From Haliotis rubra (lineage: Eukaryota), in the NCBI RefSeq assembly GCF_003918875.1, contig NW_025766981.1:682001-746000 (forward strand): a DNA stretch of 64,000 nt. Direction: 5' to 3'. A program made the position numbers and the translations under genes. Within the stretch, counting starts at the first letter, position 1. Every line of letters begins with the position of its first letter. The notes beneath the pieces are model-generated. The model had not been told where the DNA came from. It worked only from the letters and a program-made list of their open reading frames with translations, and did no database searches. Shown here piece by piece: positions 3,930 to 61,927 of the stretch.

Positions 3930-6731
3930 ATGGAGTCCACACCGCTTCTTGAAAACAAGGCTAAAGAAGAGAAGTCTAAGCTTAGAAATCTACTCAAGGC
4001 CAACATTGTGTTTCTTGTTTACCATCTGTCTATCAATGTCCATGATCCAGTGTTAACACAATACCTTTACCAGAGGTACTCCGAGGAGGTGTTCGACAAC
4101 AGCACAAAGTCAGCCAGTACTGCTAATCAAACATCCAAGTGTTTACGTCAATGAGTCGGATCCAGGATACCTGTTACAGGAAAGGGTTCAGGATCTTACT
4201 TCCAACTGTCAAACAATACCTCACAGCCATCGGAAGCTCTGGGGCGGTAATTAGTTGTATGTTCTTGGGGGCGTATTCTGATTTTCTTGGTCGACGATTT
4301 CTCTTCATATTACCTTTAGTCGGCCAGGTTCTGAAGTATGTACTGATGACACTTGTTATTTACTGGAATCTGGATCTGAAATACCTGTACATTGGCGAGG
4401 TGTTTGAAGGTGTTTCGGGGATATAATGGTACGATTTTGGCTAGCTATGCCTACACGGCTGACAATACACCACCTAAGAACTCACGGACAATTGGCATCG
4501 CTTTGATAGATTTCACGACCTACCTAGCAGCCGCAGCTTCCCAAGTTATTACCGGATTCTTCATCAAAGACCTAGGTTACCTCTACCCGTCCATAACTAC
4601 GACTTCGCTAATGCTTCTGTCACTAATCCTTGTCGTTGTTCTTCTCCCTGAAACTATCAACAAAGATAGAAGATCCCAGTACCCATCTCCGGGTGAAGGC
4701 AGTAAAAAATGTTTTGGATTCTACTTTTCAAAAGATTTTGGACAAACAAGAAGTCTTTTCTGGCTTTCGCTGACAGCGTATTTCATAACATATTTTAGTT
4801 TGAATGGTGTCTTCTTTTCTGGAATATCTTTTCCAGCTGAACCTGCCTTTCTGTTGGGGACCAGAGCTCATCGGCTATTTCAATATGGCGTTGGCCCTTT
4901 CCAGACAAATGCTTGGGATTCCAGTTATCAAACTATTCCATCTGTGCACCTCAGACCCAGAGATATGTATCATAACATCTGTCATACTGGCCGGATCCTA
5001 CGTCCTAAATGGTGTGGCCAAGACTGATCTGATGCTTTTCATGTGTAAGTCACCATTGCAGTAACGAACGCGAATAATCTTCACTGTGATAACTTTAAGT
5101 TAGCCCAAAGCACAGTCATGATCTTCCTGTGTAAGTCATGCTACATCTTCAGAAGACATTACATATTAACACCGTTGAGTTTTGCTGTTGTGTAAAGTGG
5201 ATTGTTTGTTGCAGCTGTTTTGCCAAATGGTATTGCAGCTCCTTTGTTGCCAGCACTGCGGGCTATCATGTCACGGATGGCCCCTCACAAAATGCAGGGT
5301 GAGTATGCAGGTACATTTTGATGGACTTGTCAGGCTTGCAAACAGAATGAAAACATGGATCCTCGTAGACAGATATGAATGGATATTGACACCCTTTGCA
5401 ATCAAATGCATATGCCATAGATTTTACAGATAAACAATCAGACGAATTGCATGTGGTGATAATTGAGAGAACATTCCATACATAATTTTCATAATTTTAG
5501 AAACCATATTAGAAATGATCTTAATTATACCCTCAACCTGTGCTTATGGGCCATGATTAAATAGGACTTGATAACGTCTCTATGGTGATCCTATCTCAGT
5601 GGTGGCACTCTTTACAACGACAACCACATGATTTCCAACATGCAAAGGAGAGCCACAAATTCTTCCTTTTGTGCTGGTATGAGAAGCATAACTAGACAAA
5701 CCTTTCGTCTCTGAAATGAACATATTTTACAGAAAAACGTTCATAAATAATAATCATAAAATATAAGGAAAGGAACACTGTTCCAGCAACATAACGTTCT
5801 GACACCAGAAATGGGCTTCACACATTGTTCCCATGTGGGAAATTGAACCCGGTTCTTAAGCGGGACGAGCGAACGATTCAACCACTAGACTACCCCACCG
5901 CCCCTTCTCTGAAATGAATATATTTTACAGAAAGACGGTTCATACATAATAATCATAAAATATAAGAGAAAGGAGCCCTGAGGCTTTCTCCATTATCAGA
6001 AACTATGGTAATCCAGACTAGCCATATATTCTCGACTTGCATGGGTTTCCTTGTATATATTTGTTTCAAGGTCTGTATGACAGACTAAGGTATAACCATC
6101 AATTTATTTACACACAGCAGACCTTCTACTGATTTAAAAGGAAATCAGGTAAACTGATTCTATTTTGGATCCTTACTTAAGAAATCTACAGATCATTAGA
6201 CTATAACACATGCATTACAATGATGAAATCATGTGTTTCTGAAAACGCTATCAAATAGTGATTGTAACATGTAAACGATAGGGTGAGTATATCTTCCTCC
6301 AATAGTGAACATTAATTTCAGGATCACTTTTGCGGGTATCGGACTTGTGAACATCATCTCATCAGGTACAGGGGGTAACAGTTTTCAACGAGATATATAA
6401 TGCCACTGTGAAGATGCTCCGTGGTTTTGCCTTCTTCGCCAGTGCAGGATGTCAACTGTTGTGTGCAGTTATCATGATGTGAGTAAAGTTTATTTGGTTC
6501 TAAATGTCCACAGAAAATGGTAAGGACCACCTTCATCTCGTATACAGAGTCAGTGTTTGTACCCACTTAGATGCTTGCAAGAAGTAACAGTTAGAGGTCA
6601 CATCGTGCAAATGGAAAATATTGAGATATTTACCACAAACATATTCCCTGTGTTGCAGAGTATTCTTGTATACCTCCCGCCGCGGGATTGTAACTGATAT
6701 CTCCACTGTTGCCATCAACGACAACGACTAA
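3930..6731 (+). pseudogene. SLC46A3-like: SLC46-family transporter copy 1; frameshifted (pseudogene or assembly error). Exons 3930-5044, 5215-5298, 6322-6478, 6659-6731
   Basis: Collinear with copies 2-7 (MESTPLL..., GAYSDFLGRR, LPFCWGPELIGY) but split over ORFs 3912/4139/4392/4804 by small indels; GT-AG sites at homologous positions; TAA at 6729-6731. Confidence 0.8.
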
Positions 6732-7669
6732 ACGCCAAGCCCCATCATCTACCAACACAAGTGTGTCACCGACACGACCATGTGGTATCCGTTGTTGATG
6801 TTGTCGTCAAGGAACTAGGATGACACTGAGTTATTACTCTTAAAATGAACCTGTCAATACAGGGACCTTATTAGTTCATAACCTAATTCTCAGGAACGTT
6901 TTGTATATTTGGAATTAAAGCTTTAATGCATCATGAGATTTCTTTGGGGAGGGTGATCAGTGCTTTCGGGAGTATCAGTATCAAACTAATTGTAGTTTGG
7001 CTATAGAGTGTGTCTGGTGTGGGTCGGAGAGGCTTGTAAAACTTGAAACAGCAAAATTACCTTTTGATATAGAAAACACATGGACTGTATTTACCATAAC
7101 AGCCATGAAAATAAAAGAGAGACTCATCAAAACCAACTCCAAATTGTCAATAGCATGAGGGATTACAATGGCTTCAGTAAAGGAAGGCATAAGTAATCGG
7201 CTTGATACTTTACCTTTCAGAAACGGGGTGGGAAAAACTTCATTCATTATTTTTTGGAAAATAGATGACTGCTCTTTGTTCATGTCGGAATTTTGGGTAC
7301 AAAGTATCACTAACACTAAGCATAATCAGCATGACAGGCACAGCTTTGGAATTGAAACTGTAAATCGAAAATACTTTCTTGCAACAAAACGGCCAAGATT
7401 TTTAAGCTGTCCGCCTGGCATTTCGTATCTCATTTCACTATTCTTATTTTAATCATGCATTAAATGTGATCTTGTTAAATTTTTTGAAAATGTTATTCAA
7501 ATCCTTTGGCCAATAGGCCAAAGTTATGTACCTAAATTACAGTTGCTGGTTCCTTATTTCAAGACGTTAGCAAACACCGTTGGGGCATGTTTAATGGCAA
7601 TACATTGATGTGAACCGATATGATAGCTAATATTTTACAACACGAGAAGTGTTTAGGGAATTAATGATT

Positions 7670-8258: not shown

Positions 8259-8264
8259 AAAGAA

Positions 8265-9170: not shown

Positions 9171-9992
9171 CCACAGTTACACCATTAATCTGCGATTGCA
9201 ACGATATCAAAATCTTATGCTGTTCATGAATGACTATCAAATAGTGATGATATCAGGGATTGTTCAAGGAAAGTAGAGAACCGCATAAGACATCACTTTG
9301 GTCACCGAGTGTCTAAATTAGAGGTTTTCTCCCATTGCTACCATGCAACTTTTTGAAAACAATATTAACGCCTTAGATGGTGTAACCTGGATCAAAGAAA
9401 CGTTTGAGCAAGTGCAACAAGTTCACAGTGCGTGGCATGCCGGCAAGAGCCCCTAAGAAGGTCTGAAAACATAGTTACAAAGATGTTGCTGCTAAAGCAT
9501 GGCTTCACTCAGGCAAGAGAGTCAGGGGAAAGGTTGACTTTGCAAGTCTTCACACAGATTTTCATGAATATGTATACAGAGATCTTAGAATGTTCAGAAG
9601 AATAAATGAGTGGTACATGATTGGCTGTTTGGCCATTAGTGAGCAATATCAGATCATCCATATACCAGAAACCCAATTTCAGAATTGGGTGAATGCACAA
9701 AAGCCATTTGGAAAGTGATAGGTGTAGCATGTTTGCAGCACACCAAGTCAGCCATCTAACCCACTCAGCCGACATGATTTTTAAAAACGGAAGTCGGACA
9801 ACTGGCAGTTTAGTTGCCTGACTCTGAAAGTGTGGGTTCTGAATCAACCCAAAATGAACTAGAATCTATACTTTTACTGAAAAAGTGTAATCCCAAATAT
9901 ATAGCATATGTCCCTTGTTTTGTGTTTGCCAGTCAGATCAGGATCCGATTCTGATTCCTATGTAAATGCATACGGTCAGCTTTTGCTTGCAG

Positions 9993-10145
9993 GATCACTG
10001 TTTGCCGGAGTTGGGCTTATGAACATCCTCCTCAGCAGGGTTAGGAGTAACAGCTTTCAACGTATGATGCAACTGTAAAGATATTCCGTGGTTTCGCCTT
10101 CCTCGTCTGTGCTGCTTGTCATTTGTTGGCGATGGTTATCATAGT
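9993..10145 (+). pseudogene. Orphan, frameshifted SLC46 exon 3
   Basis: ttgcag|GATCACTGTTTGCCGGA...ATCATAGT|gtgag; 153 nt versus 157 nt; no exon 1 or 2 found upstream. Confidence 0.8.
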
Positions 10146-10482
10146 GTGAGTATATGAATGGTCATTAGTAAATATTCAGGAAAAATGTGCAGGATTTATT
10201 ATTTGCCGTTTGTTATTACTGAGTCGTTCAATGTCAGTACCCACATTACATAGTGTTAACGAATTACCTTTAAAAGGTGTCCAGTCACGTCGAACATCTG
10301 ATGTCATCTGTGTGGTATATCTGTTCTACGTAGTTTTAGTATTTTTACTAGTTTTAGACTTCACTGAATAACAAATACGATCACATGTGTATCGACGTTT
10401 TACAGCTGAAATATGCCTGTTTTTCTCTCATCCAGTGAAGCAAACACTTGTCACAAACTCATATATATTTTCTTTCTTGCAA

Positions 10483-10636
10483 GGTGTTTGTATGTTTGTC
10501 ACAACCGCACCATCGTACATGCTGCGTCTATTTACGGCTCGGACGGAAAGGAGCATGTGTAAGTTGCCTATGGGAACCAGACAATCGTCAAGTTGTTGTT
10601 GTCATGATATCCACATATCATATAACTTACCAATGA
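10483..10636 (+). pseudogene. Orphan SLC46 exon-4-like segment (VFVCLSQ...)
   Basis: Begins like exon 4 (VFLCISR); the homologous acceptor reads ttgcaa instead of ttgcag. Confidence 0.55.
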
Positions 10637-11498: not shown

Positions 11499-11785
11499 TT
11501 TTTGTCCTAAAATTAAAAAAGTTGTTAAACAATCTATCTTTAAGATATTGACACAGTTCACTATTTGTTACGAGGGAGGAGGGCAGAGAAAGGGACAGCC
11601 AGGTGTTCGAGAACGGATGGAGACGGCACAGCACAGGTTAATGAATAAATAACTTTGTCTGTGAACGCGCTTCTCGAACACCTGGCTGTCCCTTTCTCTG
11701 CACTCCTCCCTCGTAACAAATACTGAACTGTGTCAATATTTTAATGATAGTTTGTTAAACAACTTCATTATTTTTAGGACAAAAA
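11499..11785. mobile_element. Foldback/MITE with ~115-bp inverted arms
   Basis: 11499-11613 is reverse-complementary to 11671-11785. Confidence 0.8.
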
Positions 11786-13354: not shown

Positions 13355-16300
13355 ATGGAGTCCACACCGCCTCTTGAAAACAAGGCTAAAGAAGAGAAGT
13401 CTAAGCTAGGAAATCTAATCAAGGTCAACATTGTGTTTCTTGTTTACCAGCTGTCTGTCAATGTCCATGATCCAGTGTTAACACAATACCTTTACCAGAG
13501 GTACTCGGACGAGGTGTTCGGCAACAGCACAAAGTCAGCCAGTACTGCTAATCAAACGTCCAAGTGTTACGTCAATGAGTCGGATCCAGGATACCTGTTA
13601 CAGGAAAGGGTTCAGGTTCTTACTTCCAACTGTCAGACAATACTCACAGCTATCGGAAACTCTACAGCGTTAATTAGCTGTATGTTCTTGGGGGCGTATT
13701 CTGATTTTCTTGGTCGACGATTTCTCTTCATATTACCTTTAGTCGGCCAGATTCTGAAGAATGTATTGACGATATTTGTTATTTACTGGATTCTGGATCT
13801 GAAATACCTGTACGTTAGCGAGGTGATTGAAGGTGTTTCGGGAGGATATAATGGTGTGATTCTGGCTACCTATGCCTACACGGCTGACAACACACCACCT
13901 AAGAACTCACGGACAGTTGGCATCGCTGTGCTAGATTTTACCACCTACCTAGCAGCCGCAGTTTCCGAAGTTATTACTGGATACTTCATCAAATACCTAG
14001 GTTACCTCTACCCGTCCATAACTACGACTTCGCTAATGCTTCTGTCACTAATTCTTGTCGTTGTTCTTCTTCCTGAAACTATCAACAAAGACAGAAGATC
14101 CCAGTACCCATCTCCGGTGAAGGCGGTGAAAAATGTTTTTGGATTCTACTTTTCAAAAGATTTTGGACAAACAAGAAGTCTTTTCTGGCTTTCGCTGACA
14201 GCGTATTTCATAACATATTTTAGTTTGAGTGGTGTCTTTTTTCTGGAGTATCTTTTCCAGCTGAACCTGCCATTCTGTTGGGGACCAGAGCTCATCGGCT
14301 ATTTCAATATGGCGTTGGCCCTTTCCAGACAAATTCTTGGGATTCCAGTCATCAAACTACTTCATTTATGCACCTCAGACGCAGGACTATGTATCATAAC
14401 ATCTGTCATACTGGCCGTATCCTACGTCCTAAATGGTGTGGCCAACACTGACGTCATGCTCTTCCTGTGTAAGTTATTCTACATCTTCAGAAGACTTGTT
14501 TATATAAATACTGTTTAGTCTTTGCGGTTGAGTAAAGTGGATTGTTTTGTTGCAGGTGTTTTGCCCAGTGGTATTGCAGCTCCTTTGTTGCCAGCACTGC
14601 GGGCTATCATGTCACGGATGGCCCCTCCTGAAATGCAGGGTGAGTATGCAGGTATATTTTGATGGAATGAGTGAGTGAGTGAGTGAGTTAATGTTTAACG
14701 TCACATCGGCAATATTTCAGCCATATTGTGATGACAAAAAGTTATGTACTAAGAATAGACATATGTATACTTATTTAAAAACCTGCCAGCGAAGGACAGT
14801 ATAACGACTAGAATGTCACAAATCGATTAAAATTAGTTTGAGTTCAGTGTAAAATGTTAAATCATTTCAAAACAACACAATATAAAATCGGGCTATAGAT
14901 CGCCAACAACTGAAGGTAGATCACCATACTAGGGACCATGGGGACTTACAGTACAATTGCTTCCTGCATGGGACCTAGCTGGATTTACACCATCCCCTCA
15001 GCCGCTGGTGATGGAAGGGAAACTTAGCCATAAATATAAAATAACAAATAGTCTACGTTTAACATTTTGATGGACATGTCAGGCCTGCAAACAGAATGAA
15101 AACATGGATGATCGTAGATAGATATGGATGGACATTGACACGAATGCAATCAGAGATATAACAATAGAGGGTCCCATGATATCAATATTCAAATAGATAT
15201 TACAGATTTAAACAATCGGGCGAAATGCCTATGATAATAATTAAGAGAACGTTGTAATCAAATTTACATACATAACGCAATTTTCACAATTATTAGAAAC
15301 CTTTATTTACGATCTTAATTATATCCTCAACTCATGGCCATGATGAAATAGACTTGATAACGTGTCCATGGTGATGTGAGCTTTCCTATCTCAGTGGTGA
15401 CACGCTTTACAACGCCAACCACATGCTTTCCAAAATGCAAAGGAGAGCCACACGTTCATCTTTTGTACAAAGCTGGTATGAGAGGCATAAGTAAACTAAC
15501 AATTTAGTCTTTGAGAAGCATAACTAGACTAACATTTTATTCTCTGAAATGAGTGAGTGAGTTTGGTTTTAAGCCGCTTTTAGCAATATTTCAGCAACAT
15601 AACGTTCTGACACCAGAAATGGACTTCACACATTGTACACATGTGGGGAATCGAACCCGGGTGTTTGGCGTGGCGAGCGAACGCTTTAACCACTAAGCTA
15701 CCCCACAACCCCGACGGTAACATGTAAACGATAAGGTGAGCTTATCTTCCTCTAATAGTGAACATTCATTTCAGGATCACTGTTTGCCGGTATCGGACTT
15801 GTGAACATCATCTCATCGGGTACTGGGATGATAATTTTCAACGAGATGTATAATGCCACTGTGAAGATGCTCCGTGGATTTGTCTTCTTCGCCGGTGCGG
15901 GATGCCAACTGTTGTGTGCAGTTATCATAGTGTGAGTACAGGTCTTGTTGCGAGTATTGAACATTCAGGACGTCCATAGATAACCCGACTAATTGATAGT
16001 CTCCCTATCTATTTCAGTATCTTTGTATGTTTACATTTCATGGATAGGATTGTATTGTATACGAAAGACTAAAACTGCTAGTTTTGCAGCATACATATTT
16101 TCTCATTGATTAGTTTCTCATTGCTTCGATTATTTCAAATTTCTTTCAACAACCTGAAAATCTGTGTATTTTCTCGCTGCTTCTAATATTTTCTCGATGT
16201 TCTTAAATGTTTTAGTATTTTCTCGTTATTTCGTTCATTTTTGCGAGATTTTCAGTATTTACGTTACTTGAAATGACAAGAAAATATTCAAAACTTGAAG

Positions 16301-16611
16301 TAACCAGAAATAGATAGAAGTAACGAGAAATTCCGCTGAAACAACAATAGTGGCAGCATTAGGCTTGTGTAGTATGTTTATTTGGTATATTTCCACACAA
16401 AAAATGGTAAGGACCATCTTCATCTCGCATACAGTGTCAGTGTATGTACCAGCTGAGATGTTTGCAAGAGGTTACTGTTAGATGTCACATCGTGCAAATG
16501 AAAAAAAATGAGATATTAAGTAAATACATATTTATGTATTGCAGAGTGTTCTTGTGTATCTCCCGCCGCAGGAGTGTAACTGATACCTCCACTTTTGGCC
16601 TCAATGACTGA
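13355..16611 (+). CDS. SLC46A3-like: SLC46-family (PCFT/SLC46A3-like) proton-coupled MFS transporter copy 2; join(13355-14468,14556-14639,15775-15931,16545-16611), 473 aa
   Basis: Open frame across GT-AG introns; DxxGRR motif (GAYSDFLGRR), glycosylated first loop (NST/NQT/NES) with Cys, PFCW Cys, IAVLDF; internal 84- and 157-nt exons as in SLC46A1. Confidence 0.9.
14667..15063 (-). mobile_element. Retroposon family C (SINE or LINE 3' end) with TSD attttgatgga
   Basis: 11-bp TSD, (tcac)n tail; empty site in copy 1 (~5315); same family on + at ~1119-1393 and ~3070-3400. Confidence 0.8.
15550..15711 (-). mobile_element. SINE family A (chimeric, see findings)
   Basis: Left half matches 24452-24614, right half matches 25530-25688. 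Confidence 0.8.
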
Positions 16612-22198: not shown

Positions 22199-25100
22199 AT
22201 GGAGTCCACACCGCTTCTTGAAAACAAGGCTAAAGAAGAGAAGTCTAAGCTAGGAAATCTACTCAAGGCCAACATTGTGTTTCTTGTTTACCAGCTGTCT
22301 ATCAATGTCCATGATCCAGTGTTAACACAATACCTTTACCAGAGGTACTCCGAGGAGGTGTTCGGCAACAGCACAAAGTCAGCCAGTACTGCTAATCAAA
22401 CGTCCAAGTGTTACGTCAATGAGTCGGATCCAGGATACCTGTTACAGGAAAGGGTTCAGGTTCTTACTTCCAACTGTCAGACAATACTCACAGCTATCGG
22501 AAACTCTACAGCGTTAATTAGCTGTATGTTCTTGGGGGCGTATTCTGATTTTCTTGGTCGACGATTTCTCTTCATATTACCTTTAGTCGGCCAGATTCTG
22601 AAGAATGTATTGACGATATTTGTTATTTACTGGAATCTAGATCTGAAATACCTGTACGTTAGCGAGGTGATTGAAGGTGTTTCGGGAGGATATAATGGTG
22701 TGATTCTGGCTACCTATGCCTACACGGCTGACAACACACCACCTAAGAACTCACGGACAGTTGGCATTGCTGTGCTAGATTTCACCACCTACCTAGCAGC
22801 CGCAGTTTCCCAAGTGATTACTGGATACTTCATCAAATACCTAGGTTACCTCTACCCGTCCATAACTACGACTTCGCTAATGCTTCTGTCACTAATTCTT
22901 GTCGTTGTTCTTCTTCCTGAAACTATCAACAAAGATAGAAGATCCCAGTACCCATCTCCGGTGAAGGCGGTGAAAAATGTTTTTGGATTCTACTTTTCAA
23001 AAGATTTTGGACAAACAAGAAGTCTTTTCTGGCTTTCGCTGACAGCGTATTTCATAACATATTTTAGTTTGAGTGGTGTCTTTTTTCTGGAGTATCTTTT
23101 CCAGCTGAACCTGCCATTCTGTTGGGGACCAGAGCTCATCGGCTATTTCAATATGGCGTTGGCCCTTTCCAGACAAATTCTTGGGATTCCAGTCATCAAA
23201 CTACTTCATTTATGCACCTCCGACCCAGGACTATGTATCATAACATCTGTCATACTGGCCGTATCCTACGTCCTAAATGGTGTGGCCAACACTGACGTCA
23301 TGCTCTTCCTGTGTAAGTTATTCTACATCTTCAGAAGACTTGTATATATTAATACTGTTTAGTCTTTGCGGTTGAGTAAAGTGGATTGTTTTGTTGCAGG
23401 TGTTTTGCCCAGTGGTATTGCAGCTCCTTTGTTGCCAGCACTGCGGGCTATCATGTCACGGATGGCCCCTCCTGAAATGCAGGGTGAGTATGCAGGTATA
23501 TTTTGATGGAATGAGTGAGTGAGTGAGTTAATATTTAACGTCACATCGGCAATATTTCAGCCATATTGTGACGACAAAACGTTATGTACTAAGAATAGAC
23601 ATATGTATACTTATTTAAAAACCTGCCAGCGAAGGACAGTATAACGACTAGAATGTCACAAATCGATTAAAACTAGTTTGAGTTCAGTGTAAAATGTTAA
23701 ATCATTTCAAAACAACACAATATAAAATCGGGCTATAGATCGCCAACAACTGAAGGTAGATCACCATACTAGGGACCATGGGGACTTACAGTACAATTGC
23801 TTCCTGCATGGGACCTAGCTGGATTTACACCATCCCCTCAGCCGCTGGTGATGGAAGGGAAACTTAGCCATAAACATAAAATAACAAATAGTCTACGTTT
23901 AACATTTTGATGGACATGTCAGACATGCAAACAGAATGAAAACATGGATCATCGTAGATAGATATGGATGGACATTGACACGAGTGCAATCAGAGACATA
24001 ACAATAGAGGGTCCCATGATATCAATATTCAAATAGATATTACAGATTTAAACAATCGGGCGAAATGCCTATGATAATAATTAAGAGAACGTTGTAATCA
24101 AATTTACATACATAACGCAATTTTCACAATTATGAGAAACCTTCATTTACAAGCTTGGAAATGTCTTGGAAAGATGATGCTTCCAAGACATTTCCAATTT
24201 TGGAAAGATGGTGTTTCCAAGACATTTATTTACGATCTTAATTATATCCTCAACTCATGGCCATGATGAAACAGACTTGATAACGTGTCAATGGTGATGT
24301 GAGCTTTCCTATCTCAGTGGTGACATGCTTTCCAAAATGCAAAGGAGAGCCACACGTTCATCTTTTGTACAAAGCTGGTATGAGAGGCTTAACTAGACTA
24401 ACATTTTAGTCTTTGAGAAGCATAACTAGACTAACATTTTAGTCTCTGAAATGAGTGAGTGAGTTTGGTTTTACACCGCTTTTTGCAATATTCCAGCAAC
24501 ATAACGTTCTGACACCAGAAATGGGCTTCACACATTGTTCCCATGTGGGAAATTGAACCCGGTTCTTCAGCATGACGAGCGAACGATTCAACCACTAGAC
24601 TATCCCACCGCCCCTTCTCTGAAATGAACATATTTTACAGAAAAACGGTTCATAAATAATAATCATAACATATAAGAGAAAGGAGCCCTGAAGCTTTCTC
24701 CATTATCAGAAACCATGGTAATCAAGACTTGCCACATATTCTAGACTTGCATGGGATTCCTTGCATATATTTGTTTCAGGGTCTGTATGGCAGACTAAGG
24801 TATAACCATCAATGTGATCAGCACACAGCGAGAATCTTCAACTGGTTTATAGGAAATAAAGTAAACTGTTCCTTTTCTGGAGCTTTACTTAATAAATCTA
24901 CAGATCATCAGACTATAACTTTATTATCTCATTTAGGTGTCCATGAACCATTTCCATGGTCTGAAAGCCACAACGTCTCCAATTAACCGTGATTACAAAC
25001 ATATGCACTTCCATAAAAATAAATATATAGAATGTCCAATGACATCTTTGAGTTCAATACAAAACATCCAAATGCACTTGTATGACGTTCCATATTTATT

Positions 25101-47781: not shown

Positions 47782-50700
47782 ATGGAGTCTACTCCTCTTC
47801 TTGAAAACAAGGATAAAGAAGACAAGTCAAAACTTGGAAATCTACTCAAAGCCAACCTTGTGTTTATTGTTTTCCATTTGGCAATCAACATTCGTAATCC
47901 TCTGTTAACGCAATACCTTTACAAGAGGTACTACGATGAGGAGTTCGATAACAGCACCGTATTTTCCAAGACTCGGAACCAAACATCCAAGTGTTACGTC
48001 AATAAGTCGGATCCAGGATACCTGTTACAGGAAAAGGTTCAGGATCTTACTTCCAACTGTCAGACAATACTGACTGCCATTGGATACTCCGGAGCAGTAA
48101 TCAGCTGTATGTTTCTGGGAGCATATTCTGATTTCCTTGGTCGACGGTTCCTCTTTGTGGTACCATTAATCGGAGAGGTTCTGAAGTTTTGGTTGCTGAC
48201 AGTTGTTATTTACTGGAATCTAGATCTGAGGTACCTTTACATTGGTGAGGTGTTTGAAGGAATTACAGGGGGATACAATGGTGTGATTCTGGCTAGCTAT
48301 GCCTACACGGCTGACAACACACCACCTAAGAATTCCCGGACACTTGGCATCGCTGTGATAGATTTCTCTGCCTACTTGGCGGCTGCGGTTTCTTCGGTCG
48401 TTACCGGATTCTTCATCAAAGACCTAGGTTACCTCTACCCGTCCATAACTACGGCTTCACTCATGCTTCTAGCACTAATCCTTGTCGTTGTTCTTCTCCC
48501 TGAAACTATCGACTCAGATAGAAGATCCCAATACCCATCTCCGGGGAAGGCAGTAAAAAATGTCTTCGGATTCTACTTTTCGAAAGGTTTTGGACCAAAG
48601 AGAAGGCTTTTCTGGCTCTCACTGGCGTCGTATTTCATATTATATTTCAGTCAGCGTGGTGTAAATTATATTGAATACCTTTTCCAACTGAACTTGCCTT
48701 TCTGTTGGGGGCCAGAACTCATTGGCTATTTCAATATGGCGTTTTCCCTCTCTCGACAATTACTTGGAATTCCAGTCATCAAACTTCTCTATCTGTGCAC
48801 CTCAGACCCAGGAATATGCATCATTACATCTGTTATTCAGGCAGGAGCCTATGTCCTTCACGGATTCGCCAACACTGACCTCATGCTCTTCATGTGTAAG
48901 TCGACCCGTGAAGATCCGGGTTAGAATTGGTCTTCAGCAACTTATATTTGTCTTAAGAGGCGTCTGGGAGTGGGTGTTTAGCCTCATCTACTTAGTTTGA
49001 TGTACGGAGTAAAAGGTGAATAACGGGACCGGGTGGTCAGGTTCGCTGACTTGGCTGACACATGTCATCGTATCCCAGTTGCGCAGATCGATGCTCATCA
49101 AGATGATCACTGGATTGTCTGGTCCAGACTCGATTATTTAAAGACCGCCTCCATACAACTTGAATATTGCTGAGTGCGGCGTAAAACTAAACTCACTCAC
49201 TCATAAAGTCTGTGAATATGAATAGCGTGGTCCAGACTCAATTATTTCCGGAGGTCGCCATATAGCTGAAATATTGCTGAGCCGCTAGGTCACCTCTGAC
49301 TTCGCAGTAACGAAAATGAATGAACACAGTAAATATCATAACGTTTGCAAAAGCACTTCTGGTTATTTTACAAGAGTTTACTTAAGTTATGGATAATTAG
49401 TATTGGTATATCATTTTACGTATTTAGAACAAACGCTATATACTGATATTTTAATATTTGATCCTGTATAATGATTATTCCTATTCCTGTTGCAGTTCTT
49501 GTACCAAATGGTATTGCCGCCCCTCTGATGCCAGCACTGCGAGCTATCATGTCGCGGACAGCTCCTGCTGAAATGCAGGGTAAGTAGCTATAATCGTTGA
49601 CGTCATCTTTCATCTTCCTCCATTCGCAGTATTGTTTATGACGTTATTCCCAGGTGTATTCTACACTCATTAGGATAGAATCGACGAGTTCAGCTTCATC
49701 GTAAGCATCTTATTATCAATCAGCATCAAATGGTAATGATACCAGATGGTCGCGATACGGTGAGGGCATCCTTTCTCAGTGTTTGAATGTCAAATCTGAA
49801 AAAGTCATTCTATTCCCTGTGTACAAACCACGCTTTACCAGAAATATATTTGCGTAGAGTGAGTGAGCGAGTTTAGTTTTACGCCGCTTATAGCAATATT
49901 CCAGCAGAATCACTGCGGACGATCACCAGAAATGGGTTTCACACATTGTACCTTGTGGGGAATCGAAACCGAATCTTCACGAGCGAACCTTTTAACCACT
50001 AGGCTTCCCCTCCGCCCTGATGGTAACGGAACCATGTATGAGAATCGGAGAATTTCTTTTTTATCTTTCTTGTAATGAAAACGGTTTGATGTTTCACCAT
50101 GTGCTCCGTTCAAAGAAAAGAAAAACATTTCGACATTGAGGTGAAACATTCCAAATACTGATCTCAAGTTAGATCTGTTTTTCGTCTTGTGGTTGTTCTT
50201 CCCAACTAGATGTTGTGTATTAAAAGTTAGAATATTGATTTCAGGATCTCTATTTGCCGGTATCGGACTTGTGAACATCATATCGGAAGGTACAGGGGTA
50301 ACAGTTTTCAACGAGATGTATGATGGCACTGTGAAGATGCTCCGTGGTTTTGTCTTCTTCGTCTGTGCGGGATGCCAACTGTTGGCTGGAGTTATCATAG
50401 TGTGAGTATATATCCAGATGTGGGTCCAGGAGGTCCATAGCCAACCGGAAATTCAGACCTATTGGGGTCTGTATGGGGTCCAGGAGATCCATAGCCATCT
50501 GCAGCTTCAGACGTATAGGGGTCTGTATGGGGTCAAGGAGGCTCATAGCCATCCGGAGCTTCAGACGTATAGGGGTCTGTATGGGGTCCAGGAGATCCAT
50601 AGCCATCCGGAACTTCAGACGTATAGGGGTCTGTATGAGACCAGTGAGTGAGTGAGTGAGTTTAGTTTTACGCCGCACTCAGCAATATTCCAGCTATATG

Positions 50701-52306
50701 GCGGCGGTCTGTAAATAATCGAGTATGGACCAGACAATCCAGTGACCAACAGCATGAATATCGATCTGCGCAATTGGGAACCGATGACATGTGTCAACCA
50801 AGTCAGCGAGCCTGACCACCCGATCCCGTTAGTCGCCTCTTACGACAAGCATAGTCGCCTTTTGTGGCAAGCGTGGGTTGCTGAAGACCTATTCTACCCC
50901 GGATCTTCACGGGTCTGTATGAGTCTAGACGATCCATAGCCAACCGTAACTTCAGACGTATGATGATGTGCATGTCTGCATGGGGCCCAGGAGGCCCATA
51001 GCCAACCGGAACATCAGACGTATGATGGTCTGTATGGGGCCCAGGAGGTCCATAGCCAACCGGAACATCAGACGTATGGGGGTCTGTATGGGGCCCAGGA
51101 GGCTCATAGCCAACCGGAACATCAGACGTATGGGGGTTTGTATGGGGCCCAGGAGGCCCATAGCCAACCGGAACATCAGACGTATGGGGGTCTGTATGGG
51201 GCCCAGGAGGCCCATAGCCAACCGGAACATCAGACGTATGATGGTCTGTATGGGGCCCAGGAGGCCCATAGCCAACCGGAACATCAGACGTATGGGGGTC
51301 TGTATGGGGCCCAGGAGGCTCATAGCCAACCGGAACATCAGACGTATGGGGGTCTGTATGGGGCCCAGGAGGCCCATAGCCAACCGGAACATCAGACGTA
51401 TGGTGTCTGTATGGGGCCCAGGAGGCCCATAGCCAACCGGAACATCAGACGTATGGTGTCTGTATGGGGCCCAGGAGGCTCATAGCCAACCGGAACATCA
51501 GACGTATGGTGTCTGTATGGGGTCCAGGCGGCCCATAGCCAACCGGAACATCAGACGTATGGTGTCTGTATGGGGTCCAGGCGGTCCATAGCCAACCGGA
51601 ACATCAGACGTATGGTGTCTGTATGGGGTCCAGGCGGTCCATAGCCAACCGGAACATCAGACGTATGGTGTCTGTATGGGGTCCAGGCGGTCCATAGCCA
51701 ACCGGAACATCAGACGTATGGTGTCTGTATGGGGTCCAGGTGGTCCATAGCCAACCGGAACATCAGACGTATGGTGTCTGTATGGGGTCCAGGAGGCCCA
51801 TAGCCAACCGGAACTTCTGACGTGAAATGAGGTCTCCCTATTTATTATCTGTATTTTCTTGGTTTTTTAACTTTACTAACTGACCGGGTAAGAGCGACTA
51901 TCAGCGACTAAAGGGACACACGTCATCGTATCCCTACTGAGTAGAACAATGCTCGTGATGTTAGTCGCTGGATTGTTTGGTCCAGACTCGATTATATACA
52001 GACATTCTTGTGATATTGCTAGAATATTGCTGAGTGCGACGTTTAACAACAAACACTTCTTTGTCTAACAGATTGTACAAATGTTGCACTGCCATATGTT
52101 GCTGTTGTATACTTTGTAGGTTTGAAAAATATTTTGAAAATGGTGAAGATATATAATACATATCCACGTGTTACAGGGTGTTCCTGTGTGTATCTCGCCG
52201 CGTGGATGACACTGAGACCTCCACTGTTGTTGTCATCAACGAAGAAGACAGGAAACCTGTTCCCATCCTCTCCCAGGACAAACCCATCTCCGAACCGACG
52301 ACGTAG
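47782..52306 (+). CDS. SLC46A3-like: SLC46-family transporter copy 6; join(47782-48895,49496-49579,50245-50401,52177-52306), 494 aa
   Basis: Intact spliced frame ending ...QDKPISEPTT*; canonical GT-AG sites. Confidence 0.88.
48903..49204 (+). mobile_element. SINE family B, 7 nt after the intron-1 donor of copy 6
   Basis: gtaagtc|gacccgtgaagatccggg; carries an internal insertion. Confidence 0.8.
49857..50017 (-). mobile_element. SINE family A
   Basis: Reverse complement, degenerate. Confidence 0.7.
50415..51822. repeat. 54/53-bp minisatellite (~21 units) in intron 3 of copy 6
   Basis: Unit tatgggggtctgtatggggcccaggaggcccatagccaaccggaacatcagacg; interrupted by a SINE-B. Confidence 0.95.
50644..50915 (-). 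mobile_element. SINE family B inserted in a minisatellite
   Basis: Full length; flanked by tgtatgagacca / tgtatgagtcta. Confidence 0.85.
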
Positions 52307-53725: not shown

Positions 53726-53726
<1 letters not shown>

Positions 53727-57669: not shown

Positions 57670-60600
57670 ATGGAGTCCACGCCTCTGCTTCAAGTTCACA
57701 AAGATTCAGAAGACAGATCCAAGCTGGGCAATCTCGTAAAGGCCAACATCGTGTTGCTGATCTTCCATTTAGCTTCCTATATGCGGAGTCCAGTTCTCTC
57801 TCAGTACCTTTACCAGCGTTACTCAAGCGAGCTGGTGGACAATGGAACAGCCACTTTCTCCACAAACGCATCATCAAAATGTTTCGTGAACAAATCAGAT
57901 CCAGCATACCAAACGCACGCTCAGGCAGAAGAAATGAGCAACAACTTAACGGTCATGTTCAGCTACATTAGCGTACCGTTATGCATTATAACCTCCACGC
58001 TGCTTGGTTCGTACTCTGACTTCATCGGTAGGCGGATTCTGTTCGTAGTCCCACTAATGGGCGAAGGTCTTCGCAATGCCCTGTGTACAGCGATCATGTA
58101 CTGGGACATGGACTTGAGATATATGTACATCGGGGAAGCAATCACAGGGATTACGGCAGGAGCCTATGGTGTAAATCTTGCCAGCTATGTATACACCGCT
58201 GACAATACACCACCTAAAGCATCCAGGACGGTTGGAATGGCTGTTCTGGACTTCACAACCTACTTCGCTGCAGCTCTATCTCAAGCAGGGACTGGATACT
58301 TTATCACATATATGGGTTTCGTTTGGCCTACTTTCGTCACAGCCGCTCTCGTATTCCTCTCAGTATTCTTCGTTGTTGTTTTACTTCCAGAAACAGTTCC
58401 TCTTGAAAAGAAACAATCGCCTTGCGTTGCGCCAACTAAAGCTATTAAGAACGTTTTTGGATTCTATTTCTCCAAAGATTTTGGCAGAAAGAGGTCATTG
58501 TTTTGGATAGCTTTCATAGCGCTCTTCGTCACAAGTGTAGGCAATTCTGGCACGGGATACATAGATTACATGTTGGTTCTTAATCAACCATTTTGCTGGG
58601 GACCGGAGATGATTGGCTACGTCAACATGGCGGCCATGCTGCTAAACCAGTTCCTGAGTGTTGGTGTGGTCAAGCTGTTTCACATGTGTTCAACTGACGA
58701 GATGATCGCCATTTTGACGGCACTGGTCAGAGGCGGCTCTGATGTTCTTCATGGTCTGGCCTACACTGATTATATGATATATGTTCGTAAGTGGTTTGTG
58801 TTTTGTGTTTGGGGGGATGGTTGATTTCATTAGTACCGTCATCACTCAGCTGACACTCAGTCATATGACAGGGGAAAATGTTTACAATTTTAAATGGTGC
58901 AATGTTTAGATTTAATGGTAAGGTTAATTTCATCATATGAAATCAACATTCCTAATTTCGTAAATACACGATGCCTTTAGAAATTGGTTAAAGTTAAAGG
59001 TCACATGCAACGTAAAACACAACTTTGCAGATTCTGATACCTTTCGGTATACCTTATAAAGTTGAAAAATAACGCGATGAAAAAACCGCGCGAAATCGGA
59101 GTTCAAACGATTCACTAATTTTCCCCCGAAAATTTCGGGGAAAAACTGGTTTCAACAACTGGGCTGCGCTCATAGCACGTGCGCAGTGAAATAGGTTCGC
59201 GCAACTTGGAAGCGGGCTGTCTGGTGAATACTCGGTGAAGGCTTTGGTGTGAGATATTTTTCTAATGTTTTGTTGATATCTCACAGGCGCGAGCTTTTTT
59301 ATATGTTATGACAGTAAATAAACTGTTTATATAATTTCATTTGTCTATTTCACCACACGTTCTTCTTACCGAGTCACTTTCTCAGTTCGATACTTAAAAG
59401 CAATGTCATTATTTAGCGTTGACAGCATTTCTAACTGTGATATAGATATGTCGTTGTCACAGACAAAACTCAATGTCTTGTTTTATTGACACCTGTGTGT
59501 CTGCCTGCCTTCTGCTAATGACAATATTCAATACACAACTGCGATCACTGACCACATGCAATTTGAACTTAACACCAATCAGGCTATACACCATAAACAA
59601 AACGCATTGATTTATGGCCCGAGTTCGGTCTCTGTCACATTATGTAATTACACAGACAGGCAGGTGTGATACTTGAACACATGACATGTTATGATGTCTG
59701 TTGATTGCAAAATGTTATACACAAAAAATGAGCCTGTATTTACAAAACCCAACATCTCTATATATACACACACAATGAGCCGTGAAGGCATCTGCAAATG
59801 AACCAGCCGTTACACTTGAGTGCACACCCACCCGCTCTGACTGGGTTCGGTATCCCGGCTGCTTCGTTTCGAGGGAGGTAAACCCAAGTACAAAATATTG
59901 CACTTTTGATTTGCGATTATACGCTTATAATTTTGTTTATTTGTTTTTTCATATTCAGCAATGCATATTATATGTCATGAAGAAGTGATAATTGTGTTTT
60001 AATTATTATGTTTGATTTTTTGGTTGCATGTGACTTTTAAGGTATACCTTCAGTGTAATCCTTTTTAATTCCGTTAAAATAGAAATCAAACTTTAAAAAC
60101 ATTAAAAACATTTTTCTACAAATATCATTAATGTCATCGCGGTTCATATTCTTCATGCTATTTACGCGTGAAGGCCCGTGTATTATTGTTGTTGTTGTTG
60201 TTGATGTTGTTGTTTAACGTCGCACTCGACAATAGTCCTGCTATACGGCGGCGGTCTGTAAATAATCATATAGGTGGAAGCAATAAATATTATAAAACAT
60301 AAATTTAGGTTTCATAAAATGACATTTCTCTCAAAGTGAAATAAGTTTTGAGTGGTATCTTCAATAATATTCATTCTTTTGGAGACAGCGGTTGCTCTCT
60401 GAAGACCATGTCTCAGTTTTGCTGAATGCGGTTGTTCTTTTGTCCTACAGAGACCGTTCTGTCAGCACTGGCTGCTCCAATGATGCCTGTAATCAGAGGG
60501 ATCGTGTCAAGGCTGGCTCCAGCTCACATTCAGGGTAACACTCATCATTCTTCTCATAAAATCTCATAAAATATGGGGGCCCGTGGGTAGCCTAGTGGTT

Positions 60601-61927
60601 AAAGCGTTCGCTCGTCACGCCAAAGACCTGGGTTCGATTCTCCACATGGGTACAAAATGCAAAGCCTATTTCTGGTCTCAGTCGGATATTGCTGAAATAT
60701 TGCTAAAAGCGGCGTAAAATCATACACACTCACTGAACCACGTGATGACTATCTGTTGATGGTTGTGTTACGTCATACACTGATGTTAGTTTCATTCGCT
60801 CAGGCTCTTTGTTTGCGGGACTGACCGTGGCGGGGGCTGTGGCGACTATGTTGGGGATGACGATATACGGGGCCGTGTACGACGCAACCGTGGAGACGAT
60901 GCGCGGATTTGTCTACTACACCAGCGGTGGAACACGCGCCCTGACAGCCGCCATACTTGTGTAAGTAGGAAAAGCCATTATACTTCGTAACGTGTATCCA
61001 TAGAGGATATGTGTAGATTCTGTTTCATAGCAATCATGTTCACAAGGGTTAATGCATAATGAGATTTTATTGCTGTGAAGTGTGACAAGTGTTGATGTAT
61101 AGCAATAGTGTTATAGGGTGTTTTATTGACGTAAAGCAATACTGTTATAGGGTGTTCTATTGACGTAAGAATGCTATTACAGGGTGTTTTATTGACGCAT
61201 AACAAAACAGTTACATGGTGTTTAGTAACGTAAAACAAACCTGATACAGGGTGTTATTGACGTTTAACAAATGCGTTACAGGGCATTTTATTTACATGTG
61301 TATTAACGTATAACAAAACTGTTACATGGTGTTTTATTAACGTAAAGGAATGTTGTTACAGGGTGTTTTATTGACACATAACAAAACTGTTACATGGTGA
61401 TTGTTTTAAGGTAAAGGAATGCTACTACATGGTGTTTTATTGACACATAACAAAACTGTTACATGGTGTTTTATTACCGTAAAGGAATGATATTACAGGG
61501 CGTTTTTGGACGCATAACAAAACTGTTGCATAGTCGGCTTTTTTAGGGTAAAGGAATGTTGTTACAGGTTGTTTTACTGACACATAACAAAACTGTTACA
61601 TGGTGTTTTATTAACGTAAAGGAATGCTATTACAAGGTGTTTTTGGACGCATAACAAAACTTTTACATGGTGTTTTTTCAGGTAAAGGAATGCTATTACA
61701 GGGTGTTTTATTGACACATAACAAAACTGTTACACGGTGTGTTTTTAAGGTAAAGGAATGTTATTACATGGTGTTTTATGGACGCATAACAAAACTGTTA
61801 CAGGGTGTTTTACTGCGTGGCGCCGGGGATACTACGCCAGATCAAAACCGAGACGATCATTATCAACGACCAGGACGAGAGGGCACACATCGCCAGACCG
61901 TCCGAAAAGCCAGTTCTTGACTCTTAG
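57670..61927 (+). CDS. SLC46A3-like: SLC46-family transporter copy 7 (most divergent); join(57670-58786,60451-60534,60804-60960,61804-61927), 493 aa
   Basis: GSYSDFIGRR, QPFCWGPEMIGY; 84- and 157-nt exons conserved; last exon VFYCVAPGILRQ...PVLDS*. Confidence 0.86.
58998..60036. mobile_element. Kolobok-like non-autonomous DNA transposon in intron 1 of copy 7
   Basis: TTAA|AGGTCACATGCAAC ... GTTGCATGTGACTT|TTAA. Confidence 0.7.
60575..60733 (+). mobile_element. SINE family A in intron 2 of copy 7
   Basis: A box, B box ggttcgattc, tail. Confidence 0.8.
61100..61812. repeat. ~31-bp (62-bp dimer) minisatellite containing the exon-4 acceptor of copy 7
   Basis: Repeats of tgttaca(g/t)ggtgttttattgac... 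alternating cataacaaaac / gtaaaggaatg. Confidence 0.9.

What the first reader, a model, noticed from the sequence alone, without database searches (positions are those of the whole stretch)
3930..61927. Seven-member tandem SLC46 expansion with charge changes in predicted cavity-lining helices
Seen: loops are conserved but TM segments differ in polar or charged residues. TM1: QLSVNVHDP (copies 2-4), HLAINVRNP (5/6), HLASYMRSP (7). TM5: SEV/SQV/SSV, which differs even among near-identical copies 2-4. TM7: SLSGVFFLEY, SQAGVYFVEY, SQRGVNYIEY, GNSGTGYIDY. Known: vertebrates have three SLC46 genes, transporting folate (A1) and muropeptides, cGAMP or steroid conjugates (A2/A3). Inference: a diversifying lysosomal or gut transporter repertoire (diet-derived or microbial ligands) evolving by birth and death.
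Basis: partly seen in the sequence, partly recalled or inferred. Interest (0 to 1): 0.7.

Follow-up and report, generated by a model that had tools for sequence, protein, structure and literature searches.

The report
Abalone SLC46 transporter gene array
This stretch of the blacklip abalone genome holds six intact genes and one broken gene for SLC46-type membrane transporters. They belong to an array of at least 35 such genes whose pocket residues differ between gene groups, but the genes evolve mainly under ordinary purifying selection and their cargo is unknown.

Summary
The window (Haliotis rubra, contig C2091:682001-746000) carries six intact four-exon SLC46-family genes of 473-494 aa. All introns are GT-AG at conserved positions. 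It also carries one frameshifted copy and a stray exon relic. The quoted motifs are right apart from two conservative I/V differences.

"Seven-member" understates it. The contig holds about 35 full-length SLC46-like first exons between 403 and 775 kb, plus relics.

The proteins keep the SLC46 scaffold: the DxxGRR loop, the Cys pair, the TM5 acid and TM10 Arg gate, and a PCFT-like fold. All lack the folate-binding residues of PCFT, so folate is unlikely to be the cargo.

The variable polar or charged sites in TM1, TM5, TM7 and TM11 fall on cavity-facing positions. This is judged by homology to mapped PCFT pocket residues and by family-wide polar helix faces.

Selection is mainly purifying (omega 0.28). 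The fastest helices are TM12, TM1 and TM3. Pocket positions as a set are not accelerated. Positive selection is borderline: M2a is not significant, M8 gives p=0.02, and two sites stand out (291 and 414).

Birth-and-death evolution is supported. RefSeq already annotates most of these genes, and this scan has already reported the same array from neighbouring windows.

The parts
3930..6725 (+). Copy 1: frameshifted SLC46 copy (apparent pseudogene) with relics of all four exons, at about 3930-5044, 5217-5300, 6315-6479 and 6660-6725
   Evidence: Exon 1 is 94.3% identical to copy 3. It carries six 1-2 nt indels, at 4142, 4219, 4419, 4691, 4712 and 4814, and no nonsense substitution. Alignment-guided dN/dS against copy 3 is 0.35. 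Six-frame reading shows 7 stops (L013). Some indels adjoin short homopolymers, so assembly error is not excluded.
9986..10146 (+). Stray exon-3 relic between copies 1 and 2, frameshifted
   Evidence: tblastn matches to exon 3 peptides. Residues 423-450 of P0009 match at 96%. The translation switches frame.
13355..16611 (+). Copy 2, intact gene of 473 aa. Exons 13355-14468, 14556-14639, 15775-15931 and 16545-16611
   Evidence: The spliced model equals RefSeq protein P0001 exactly. All introns are GT-AG. The N-terminal motif is altered (MESTPPLE, with Pro in place of Leu6).
22199..26866 (+). Copy 3, intact gene of 473 aa. Exons 22199-23312, 23400-23483, 25751-25907 and 26800-26866
   Evidence: It differs from copy 2 at 10 residues, with dS 0.027 and dN/dS 0.35.
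32018..36440 (+). Copy 4, intact gene of 473 aa. Exons 32018-33131, 33219-33302, 35591-35747 and 36374-36440
   Evidence: It differs from copy 3 at 8 residues, with dS 0.024.
40618..43590 (+). Copy 5, intact gene of 493 aa. Exons 40618-41731, 41942-42025, 42563-42719 and 43464-43590
   Evidence: RefSeq P0017 (337 aa) is a shorter isoform of this gene that skips residues 216-371.
47782..52306 (+). Copy 6, intact gene of 494 aa. Exons 47782-48895, 49496-49579, 50245-50401 and 52177-52306
   Evidence: The H. asinina orthologue is P0013. Intron 3 holds a 53-54 bp minisatellite.
57670..61927 (+). Copy 7, intact gene of 493 aa. Exons 57670-58786, 60451-60534, 60804-60960 and 61804-61927
   Evidence: The model fits RefSeq P0016: all four exact-match segments map at these exons, apart from residue 373 at the exon 1/2 junction, which the exact-match scan skipped. 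It is about 51% identical to copy 2 and synonymous sites are saturated. Its sister paralogue lies just past the window at C2091:747286.

Best explanation
The window is a seven-copy slice of a much larger tandem array of SLC46-family genes in the blacklip abalone. SLC46 proteins belong to the major facilitator superfamily and are probably proton-coupled. The array has about 35 full-length members on one 1.2 Mb contig.

The array grows and decays by local tandem duplication and pseudogenisation. The proteins keep the SLC46 transport machinery:
- 12 TM helices with a PCFT-like fold;
- the DxxGRR loop between TM2 and TM3;
- an extracellular Cys-Cys pair;
- an acidic residue in TM5 paired with an Arg in TM10, which forms the inner gate;
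- the proline kink in TM1.

They lack the residues that make PCFT a folate carrier, so they most likely move other small organic solutes.

A conserved N-terminal E-x-x-P-L-L (acidic dileucine) motif suggests an endolysosomal location. This is inferred and was not shown.

Paralogue groups differ at a limited set of cavity-facing positions:
- TM1 38/39, where H-D or H-E alternates with R-N or R-S;
- TM5 205;
- TM7 291, 292 and 295;
- TM11 414.

Most of these differences are stable within each group across abalone species; the two sites flagged by the site models, 291 and 414, still vary within groups. The whole gene is under purifying selection. This fits specialisation of substrate or charge preference after duplication, not a continuing arms race. 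At most two pocket sites show weak signs of repeated adaptive change.
For: Identity and fold:
- Pfam MFS_1.
- The only solved relative is chicken PCFT, E=1.8e-39 over residues 28-450.
- The AlphaFold model has pLDDT 91.3 and pTM 0.90 with 12 TMs. Its best structural match is 7BC6, TM-score 0.84/0.91 and rmsd 2.8 A.
- RefSeq names the genes SLC46A3-like or PCFT-like.

Gene models: six intact four-exon genes with GT-AG introns. Nine orthologues in three other species have the same structure.

Array size: 61 matches in the genome. About 35 cover the full first exon on C2091 between 403 and 775 kb.

Birth and death:
- Tree with the species-specific triplet c2-c4 and cross-species orthologues for c5, c6 and c7.
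- Relics: copy 1, the stray exon, L010, L035, L036 and L044.
- A truncated c2-type copy in H. asinina.

Scaffold kept and folate residues lost:
- D117/G120/R121, C71/C308, D194 and R387 are kept.
- Chicken PCFT R156 becomes E, D164 becomes G, E407 becomes N or G, Y323 becomes Q, and H289 becomes L, Q or N.

Selection:
- Pairwise dN/dS is 0.24-0.43 and M0 omega is 0.277.
- Site models: M1a/M2a p=0.33, M7/M8 p=0.02, M8a/M8 p=0.008.
- Flagged sites are 291 (P 0.89) and 414 (P 0.97).

Cavity placement:
- c2 288-298 aligns with the hPCFT TMD7 residues 278-288 found by cysteine scanning (PMC8978580).
- Site 291 aligns with human H281.
- Site 414 lies one helical turn from N410, which aligns with chicken E407.
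- Family-wide polar faces agree.

Group-specific chemotypes are conserved across species.
Against: - No expression, localisation or transport data were obtained.
- Cavity orientation rests on alignment to PCFT and on polarity periodicity.
- The site models used fixed nucleotide-tree branch lengths and ignore gene conversion between tandem paralogues. Gene conversion can create false positives.
- Subfamily placement (A1, A2 or A3) was not tested by a tree that includes vertebrates.
- The dileucine motif is altered in copy 2 and in a few orthologues.
- The assembly is a draft. The frameshift-only lesions in copy 1 and in Hrub_638143 may be assembly errors.
Confidence: 0.75

Rival explanations
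1. The repertoire is under pervasive diversifying (positive) selection on cavity residues, driven by varied microbial or dietary ligands, as in immune-receptor families.
For: - M8 beats M7 (p=0.02) and M8a (p=0.008).
- The two flagged sites, 291 and 414, are pocket positions.
- TM7 289-299 and TM1 36-40 are very diverse across all 35 paralogues.
- TM1 38/39 switched at least three times between H with an acid and R with a neutral residue.
Against: - M2a against M1a is not significant (p=0.33).
- Only about 1.2% of sites fall in the omega>1 class, and that omega is about 2.
- The 24 PCFT-defined pocket positions have omega 0.26 against 0.31 for other TM sites, permutation p about 0.10.
- The highest omegas include the outer helices TM12 (0.82) and TM3 (0.45).
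- The young copies c2-c4 have dN/dS of 0.32-0.43, not above 1.
- Gene conversion was not modelled.
Confidence: 0.15
2. The young triplet (copies 2-4), and perhaps much of the array, is a dosage amplification or neutral copy-number variation without functional divergence. The residue differences would then be drift under relaxed constraint.
For: - Copies 2-4 differ at only 8-14 residues. Most of these changes are conservative or lie in loops, and the TM7 and TM1 motifs are identical.
- Their dN/dS (0.32-0.43) is somewhat higher than between older pairs (0.24-0.27, NG86).
- The outer helices evolve fastest.
Against: - Older paralogue groups keep distinct pocket chemotypes across species.
- All six genes keep intact reading frames and splice sites.
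- E205Q and L6P distinguish members of the triplet at possibly functional positions.
Confidence: 0.25
3. Copies 2-4 are allelic or assembly duplicates, meaning haplotypes of one gene laid in tandem by the assembler.
For: - Coding identity is high (97-98%).
- The assembly is a draft with small-indel lesions in some copies.
Against: - There are three copies, not two.
- Identity drops to 92-96% outside the gene. Intron 2 is 1135, 2267 and 2288 bp in the three copies, and intron 3 is 613, 892 and 626 bp.
- Spacing between copies differs (8.8 and 9.8 kb).
- dS is 0.02-0.04.
- There is no gap of Ns between them. The only N run is at 63521-63723.
Confidence: 0.05

Closest known systems
[quoted passage not shown]
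   Same: - 12-TM MFS fold, TM-score 0.84-0.91.
- The DxxGRR loop between TM2 and TM3.
- The ECL1-ECL4 cysteine pair.
- N-glycosylation sequons in ECL1.
- The TM1 proline kink and breaks in TM4 and TM10.
- The gate pair of a TM5 acid and a TM10 Arg.
   Different: About 26% identical. The folate-contact and coupling residues are all replaced:
- Arg156 and Asp164 become Glu and Gly.
- Glu407 becomes Asn or Gly.
- Tyr323 becomes Gln.
- His289 becomes Leu, Gln or Asn.
- Asp294 becomes Phe or Tyr.

None of the 35 abalone paralogues has the TM4 Arg. A conserved TM7 acid (E or D at 298) is present instead.
SLC46A2 and SLC46A3 (vertebrate muropeptide, cGAMP, and lysosomal steroid-conjugate or bile-acid transporters)
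   Same: RefSeq names most abalone copies 'SLC46A3-like'. They are non-folate members of the family. The N-terminal E-x-x-P-L-L motif suggests a possible endolysosomal location.
   Different: Orthology to A2 or A3 was not tested here. Vertebrates have one gene of each, while abalone has about 35 in one array. No substrate or localisation data exist for the abalone genes.
Drosophila SLC46 homologues (for example CG8046, which is needed for cytosolic sensing of tracheal cytotoxin)
   Same: They are invertebrate SLC46 paralogues linked to import of a microbial ligand (Paik et al. 2017, as summarised in PMC11509177).
   Different: No such functional evidence exists for molluscs.
SLC family expansions reported in other gastropods (Alviniconcha holobiont preprint)
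   Same: SLC46 is listed among the expanded solute-carrier families in a gastropod (10.1101/2025.05.21.655246).
   Different: That report is a gene-family count without locus structure, pocket analysis or selection tests. It concerns a different lineage and ecology.

Membership tests
SLC46 family (MFS; PCFT/HCP family) | 12-TM major facilitator fold closest to PCFT | tested here: met
   The AF2 model has pLDDT 91.3 and 12 TM helices. The top Foldseek hit is 7BC6, E=2e-20 and TM-score 0.84/0.91. Pfam MFS_1 matches.
SLC46 family (MFS; PCFT/HCP family) | Sequence homology to PCFT over the whole length | tested here: met
   phmmer against the PDB gives E=1.8e-39, with residues 28-450 aligned to PCFT 34-447. 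It is the only hit below 1e-5.
SLC46 family (MFS; PCFT/HCP family) | TM2-TM3 loop motif D-x-x-G-R-R/K (hPCFT Asp109, Gly112, Arg113) | tested here: met
   SDFLGRR is present in copies 2-6 (SDFIGRR in copy 7; D, G and RR kept in all six). G120 and R121 are invariant and D117 is at least 90% conserved in the 98-sequence alignment.
SLC46 family (MFS; PCFT/HCP family) | Extracellular cysteine pair (hPCFT Cys66-Cys298) | tested here: met
   C71 and C308 are present in all 34 intact H. rubra paralogues examined and are at least 90% conserved across the family.
SLC46 family (MFS; PCFT/HCP family) | Inner-gate salt bridge between a TM5 acid and a TM10 Arg (chicken Glu193-Arg384) | tested here: met
   D194 and R387 align with these residues. 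A D or E at 194 is present in nearly all array members.
SLC46A1 (PCFT, folate transporter) | TM4 Arg156-Asp164 pair; the Arg binds the folate gamma-carboxylate | tested here: not met
   The aligned residues are E156 and G164 in all window copies. No array member has Arg at 156 (role of the residues from PMC7612623).
SLC46A1 (PCFT, folate transporter) | Pterin-contact residues Glu407 (TM11), Tyr323 (TM8) and His289 (TM7) | tested here: not met
   N410 (G in copy 7), Q326, and L, Q or N at 291.
SLC46A3 (lysosomal symporter) | Orthology to vertebrate SLC46A3 rather than A1 or A2 | not tested
   Only RefSeq's automatic names support this. No vertebrate A2 or A3 sequences were in hand for a tree.
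SLC46A3 (lysosomal symporter) | Lysosomal localisation | not testable with these tools
   The only evidence is a sequence hint. The N-terminal E-x-x-P-L-L fits the [DE]xxxL[LI] sorting motif. It is the majority consensus of the 98-sequence alignment and is present in most array members.

The most novel reading that the evidence does not exclude
Abalone, and perhaps gastropods more widely, may maintain a repertoire of at least 35 endolysosomal SLC46 importers. Their pocket electrostatics would have been repeatedly re-tuned: the TM1 H-D/E to R-N/S switch, loss of the family-typical TM7 Arg294 and TM11 Glu410 pair, and hypervariable TM7 291 and TM11 414. Such a repertoire could deliver a wide range of microbial or algal small molecules (muropeptides, cyclic nucleotides, conjugated metabolites) to the cytosol. 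This would be a transporter-level counterpart to the expanded innate-sensor families of molluscs.
Probability: 0.15. Interest if true: 0.65.

Novelty: new member of a known kind. Interest (0 to 1): 0.35.

Why it matters
SLC46 carriers are the only known dedicated importers of muropeptides and cGAMP in animals. Vertebrates have three of them. An animal with dozens, differing mainly at cavity positions, is a natural library for learning which pocket residues set substrate and charge selectivity in this family. It may also show how a herbivorous mollusc handles microbial or algal metabolites.

As it stands, this is an ordinary lineage-specific expansion of a transporter family, though a large one. 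RefSeq already annotates most of its genes, there are no functional data, and the evidence for adaptive diversification is weak.

Tried and rejected
- **RNA evidence.** Expression and read depth were not tested.
- **Ancestral-state counting (SLAC-type).** I did not attempt reconstruction by any other route and used marginal-likelihood site models instead.
- **IQ-TREE codon-model tree search.** It timed out. I used a GTR+G nucleotide tree and scaled its branch lengths.
- **Model coordinates.** None are exposed. Burial and cavity exposure could not be computed, so I used PCFT homology and family polarity as proxies.
- **Allelic or assembly duplication of copies 2-4.** Rejected on intron-length and flank divergence.
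- **Folate-transporter reading.** Rejected on the pocket residues.
- **Gene models outside the window.**
  - The model for Hrub_662070 lacks a recognisable exon 3.
  - Hrub_638143 has a frameshift in a T6 run in exon 3.
  - The first exon of H. asinina P0013 is truncated.
  - All three were used only in part.
- **Literature.** Searches found no paper on the abalone SLC46 array. The SLC46A3 remarks in the pearl-oyster paper are generic and were not used.
- **Joined spliced models.** The joined proteins of copies 3-6 were handled only inside scripts that read the window file. They were not sent to any search or fold tool. Copies 2 and 7 were searched as the database proteins P0001 and P0016, and first exons were sent by reference.


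Full report
**What is there**

The window is G000:C2091:682001-746000 of the blacklip abalone, Haliotis rubra. The organism follows from a 100% match to a RefSeq H. rubra protein.

ORF listing shows six long + strand ORFs of 380-387 aa and one shorter, related ORF. All hit Pfam MFS_1. The only solved relative is chicken PCFT (SLC46A1), at E=2.7e-29 for exon 1 and 1.8e-39 for the full protein P0001.

I mapped RefSeq models and enumerated splice sites. This gave six intact four-exon genes of 473-494 aa. Exons are about 1114, 84 and 157 nt, with a last exon of 67-130 nt. All introns are GT-AG and sit at the same positions and phases. Nine orthologues from H. asinina, H. cracherodii and H. rufescens have the same structure.

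The model of copy 2 equals P0001 exactly. The model of copy 7 fits P0016 in all four exact-match segments, apart from residue 373 at the exon 1/2 junction, which the scan skipped.

Copy 1 (3930-6725) retains all four exons. It has six 1-2 nt frameshifting indels in exon 1 and at least one in exon 3. It has no nonsense substitution, and its alignment-guided dN/dS against copy 3 is 0.35. It is therefore a recent pseudogene or a copy damaged by assembly indels. A stray, frameshifted exon-3 relic lies at 9986-10146.

**The motifs**

The quoted TM7 strings are exact. The TM5 pattern of SEV, SQV and SSV is right, including the E/Q difference within the near-identical copies 2-4. Two TM1 strings differ from the quotation by conservative I/V changes: copy 3 has QLSINVHDP and copy 6 has HLAINIRNP.

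**The array is far larger than seven**

A six-frame search of the whole assembly with the copy 2 first exon gave 61 matches. About 35 cover the full first exon with an open frame on this one 1.2 Mb contig, between 403 and 775 kb. Weaker relatives lie at 150-390 kb. Two further copies are on contig C7 and one on C247. Several relics or split hits also appear: L010 with two stops, copy 1, L035, L036 and L044.

Most of the array is on the + strand.

This scan has already reported the same array from neighbouring windows, with verdicts of 'ordinary duplicated family' and 'borderline selection at two positions'. I treated those notes as leads and re-tested them here on different genes.

**Are copies 2-4 real paralogues?**

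Their units are 97-98% identical over the gene and its 5' flank. Identity falls to 92-96%, with indels, elsewhere. Intron 2 is 1135, 2267 and 2288 bp in the three copies. Intron 3 is 613, 892 and 626 bp. The spacing between copies is 8.8 and 9.8 kb. dS is 0.02-0.04. No gap of Ns separates them. Three copies with these differences are not two alleles. Read depth could not be checked.

**History**

In a tree of 50 first-exon proteins, copies 2-4 form an H. rubra-specific clade (SH-aLRT 98). Their nearest relatives are the upstream gene at 675818, copy 1 and H. asinina P0002. Copy 6 pairs with H. asinina P0013. Copy 7 pairs with the next gene downstream (747286) and has an H. cracherodii orthologue, P0015.

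Gene order is colinear between H. rubra and H. asinina, from the P0012 type through the P0011 and P0002 types to the P0013 type. H. asinina also has a truncated c2-type copy between P0002 and P0013. Birth and death is therefore supported in more than one lineage.

**What kind of SLC46**

The AlphaFold model of P0001, built with a 98-sequence alignment, has pLDDT 91.3 and pTM 0.90. It shows 12 TM helices, with breaks in TM4 and TM10 as in PCFT. Its best PDB match is 7BC6, at TM-score 0.84/0.91 and rmsd 2.8 A.

These family features are kept:
- the TM2-3 loop DxxGRR (D117, G120, R121);
- the Cys71-Cys308 pair;
- the TM1 proline;
- D194 in TM5 and R387 in TM10, which align with the chicken Glu193-Arg384 gate pair.

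The residues that define folate recognition and coupling in PCFT are described in PMC7612623 and PMC8978580. All of them are replaced:
- Arg156 becomes Glu.
- Asp164 becomes Gly.
- Glu407 becomes Asn or Gly.
- Tyr323 becomes Gln.
- His289 becomes Leu, Gln or Asn.
- Asp294 becomes Phe or Tyr.

None of the 35 paralogues has Arg at 156. Filing these genes under SLC46 is justified. Filing them as PCFT-type folate carriers is not.

The N-terminus E-x-x-P-L-L fits the [DE]xxxL[LI] adaptor-binding motif. It is the majority consensus of the family alignment and is present in most array members. That supports an endolysosomal location by inference only. Copy 2 has Leu6 replaced by Pro.

**Do the variable residues line the cavity?**

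Model coordinates are not exposed, so I used two proxies.

The first proxy is homology to mapped PCFT residues:
That stretch includes the cysteine-scanning substrate-pathway residues Ile278, His281, Phe282, Gly283, Ala284, Asp286 and Leu288.
- Site 291 aligns with human His281.
- E/Q/S205 lies 11 residues, or three helical turns, from the gate acid D194 on TM5.
- Site 414 lies one turn from N410, which aligns with chicken Glu407.
- Sites 38/39 lie just before the TM1 proline break.

The second proxy is polarity across 87 more distant relatives. Positions 205, 291, 294-296, 298, 410, 414 and 418 are polar in 47-97% of sequences, while flanking positions are almost purely hydrophobic.

Cavity-lining is thus supported for the quoted sites.

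The same table shows that the window clade has lost two family-typical charges. Glu410 is found in 66 of the 87 relatives and Arg/Lys294 in 42 of the 87.

**Selection**

Pairwise dN/dS is 0.24-0.43. I built a 19-sequence codon alignment of the clade that contains copies 2-6, drawn from H. rubra and three other species. On it I fitted Goldman-Yang site models with my own likelihood code, using a GTR+G tree with one free branch-length scale.

| Test | Result |
|---|---|
| M0 | omega 0.277 |
| M1a against M2a | 2dlnL = 2.2, p = 0.33 |
| M7 against M8 | 2dlnL = 7.8, p = 0.02; 1.2% of sites at omega about 2.1 |
| M8a against M8 | 2dlnL = 5.8, p = 0.008 |

Only two sites reach a posterior above 0.8: site 291 (0.89) and site 414 (0.97).

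Omega by region is as follows.

| Region | Omega |
|---|---|
| All TM helices | 0.30 |
| All loops | 0.23 |
| ICL3 | 0.11 |
| ECL1 | 0.35 |
| TM12 | 0.82 |
| TM1 | 0.50 |
| TM3 | 0.45 |
| Core helices (1, 4, 7, 10) | 0.28 |
| Side helices (2, 5, 8, 11) | 0.24 |
| Outer helices (3, 6, 9, 12) | 0.42 |

The 24 PCFT-defined pocket positions have omega 0.26 against 0.31 for other TM sites. Their mean posterior omega is not significantly higher (permutation p about 0.10).

The family is therefore under ordinary purifying selection. Part of the TM variability lies in outer, presumably lipid-facing helices. Adaptive change is, at best, confined to a couple of pocket sites. Gene conversion among tandem copies was not modelled and could inflate even that signal.

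**Pattern of pocket differences**

Apart from the two flagged sites, 291 and 414, which still vary within groups, the differences are mostly fixed between paralogue groups and conserved within groups across species.

The clearest case is TM1 38/39. His is always paired with Asp or Glu, and Arg is always paired with Asn or Ser. At the codon level, CAT GAT alternates with CGT AAT, which is two transitions. At least three co-switches are needed on the tree, for example H. cracherodii P0006 against its sister H. rufescens P0007.

This looks like specialisation of cavity charge after duplication, possibly helped by gene conversion. It does not look like continuous diversification.

**Limits**

- Joined spliced proteins of copies 3-6 were used only inside scripts and were not sent to search or fold tools.
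- Placement relative to vertebrate A1, A2 and A3 was not tested. It rests on RefSeq names alone.

**Verdict**

The array is real and its coordinates are accurate. It is part of a very large abalone SLC46 array, is not folate-type, and shows cavity-position differences between paralogue groups. Selection is predominantly purifying and evidence for diversification is only borderline.

It is a new member, and a large lineage-specific expansion, of a known family. RefSeq already annotates most of these genes (protein models were found here for copies 2, 5 and 7 in the window and for several neighbours), and this scan has seen the array before.

Noticed in passing
window 13370-13375 (codons 6-7 of copy 2), compared with copies 3-7: Copy 2 alone among the window genes has MESTPPLE instead of MESTPLLE. 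This breaks the conserved N-terminal E-x-x-P-L-L (acidic dileucine-type) motif. A few orthologues (H. asinina P0002, H. rufescens P0004, H. cracherodii P0006) also deviate. It may mean a different subcellular destination.
   Followed up: partly
codons 38-39 of every copy (for example window 13466-13471 in copy 2 and 40729-40734 in copy 5): There is a coupled toggle in mid-TM1, just before the proline kink. His is always paired with Asp or Glu, and Arg with Asn or Ser (CAT GAT against CGT AAT). At least three co-switches occur across the clade. The cause could be epistasis or gene conversion.
   Followed up: partly
c2 residues 294 and 410 (window copies 2-7): The window clade has lost two charges that are typical of the wider family. 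These are Arg/Lys at TM7 294 (42 of 87 distant relatives) and Glu at TM11 410 (66 of 87; it aligns with chicken PCFT Glu407). This looks like a correlated loss of a possible cavity charge pair.
   Followed up: partly
window 50422-50637 and 50973-51823: A GC-rich 53-54 bp minisatellite (4 and 16 copies, 88-95% matches) lies inside intron 3 of copy 6. It produces the long spurious ORFs on both strands at 50250-51485.
   Followed up: partly
window 1919-2551: An ORF of 210 aa has HTH_29 and Tc3-type transposase HTH domains. It is a Tc1/mariner-like transposase fragment upstream of copy 1.
   Followed up: partly
window 208-1197 and 10515-11513: A dispersed repeat of about 1 kb, 96% identical, flanks copy 1 on both sides. 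Further shared blocks (6782-7507, 19167-19879, 29942-30658, 37215-38179) recur between the duplication units.
   Followed up: no
window 40618-43590 (copy 5), RefSeq protein P0017: RefSeq lists a 337-aa isoform that uses an internal donor in exon 1 near 41262. It skips residues 216-371 (TM6-TM9) and is unlikely to be a working transporter.
   Followed up: no
L058 2924-3081 (G000:C2091, about 640.4 kb; RefSeq P0010): Exon 3 of the paralogue at 638143 changes frame at a T6 run, which gives P0010 an aberrant C-terminus instead of TM12. This is either a very recent pseudogene or a homopolymer error in the assembly.
   Followed up: partly
window 61089-61812: A degenerate tandem repeat (about 78% between offset copies) lies in intron 3 of copy 7, just upstream of the last exon.
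   Followed up: no
window 63521-63723: An assembly gap of 203 N. It was left untouched.
   Followed up: no
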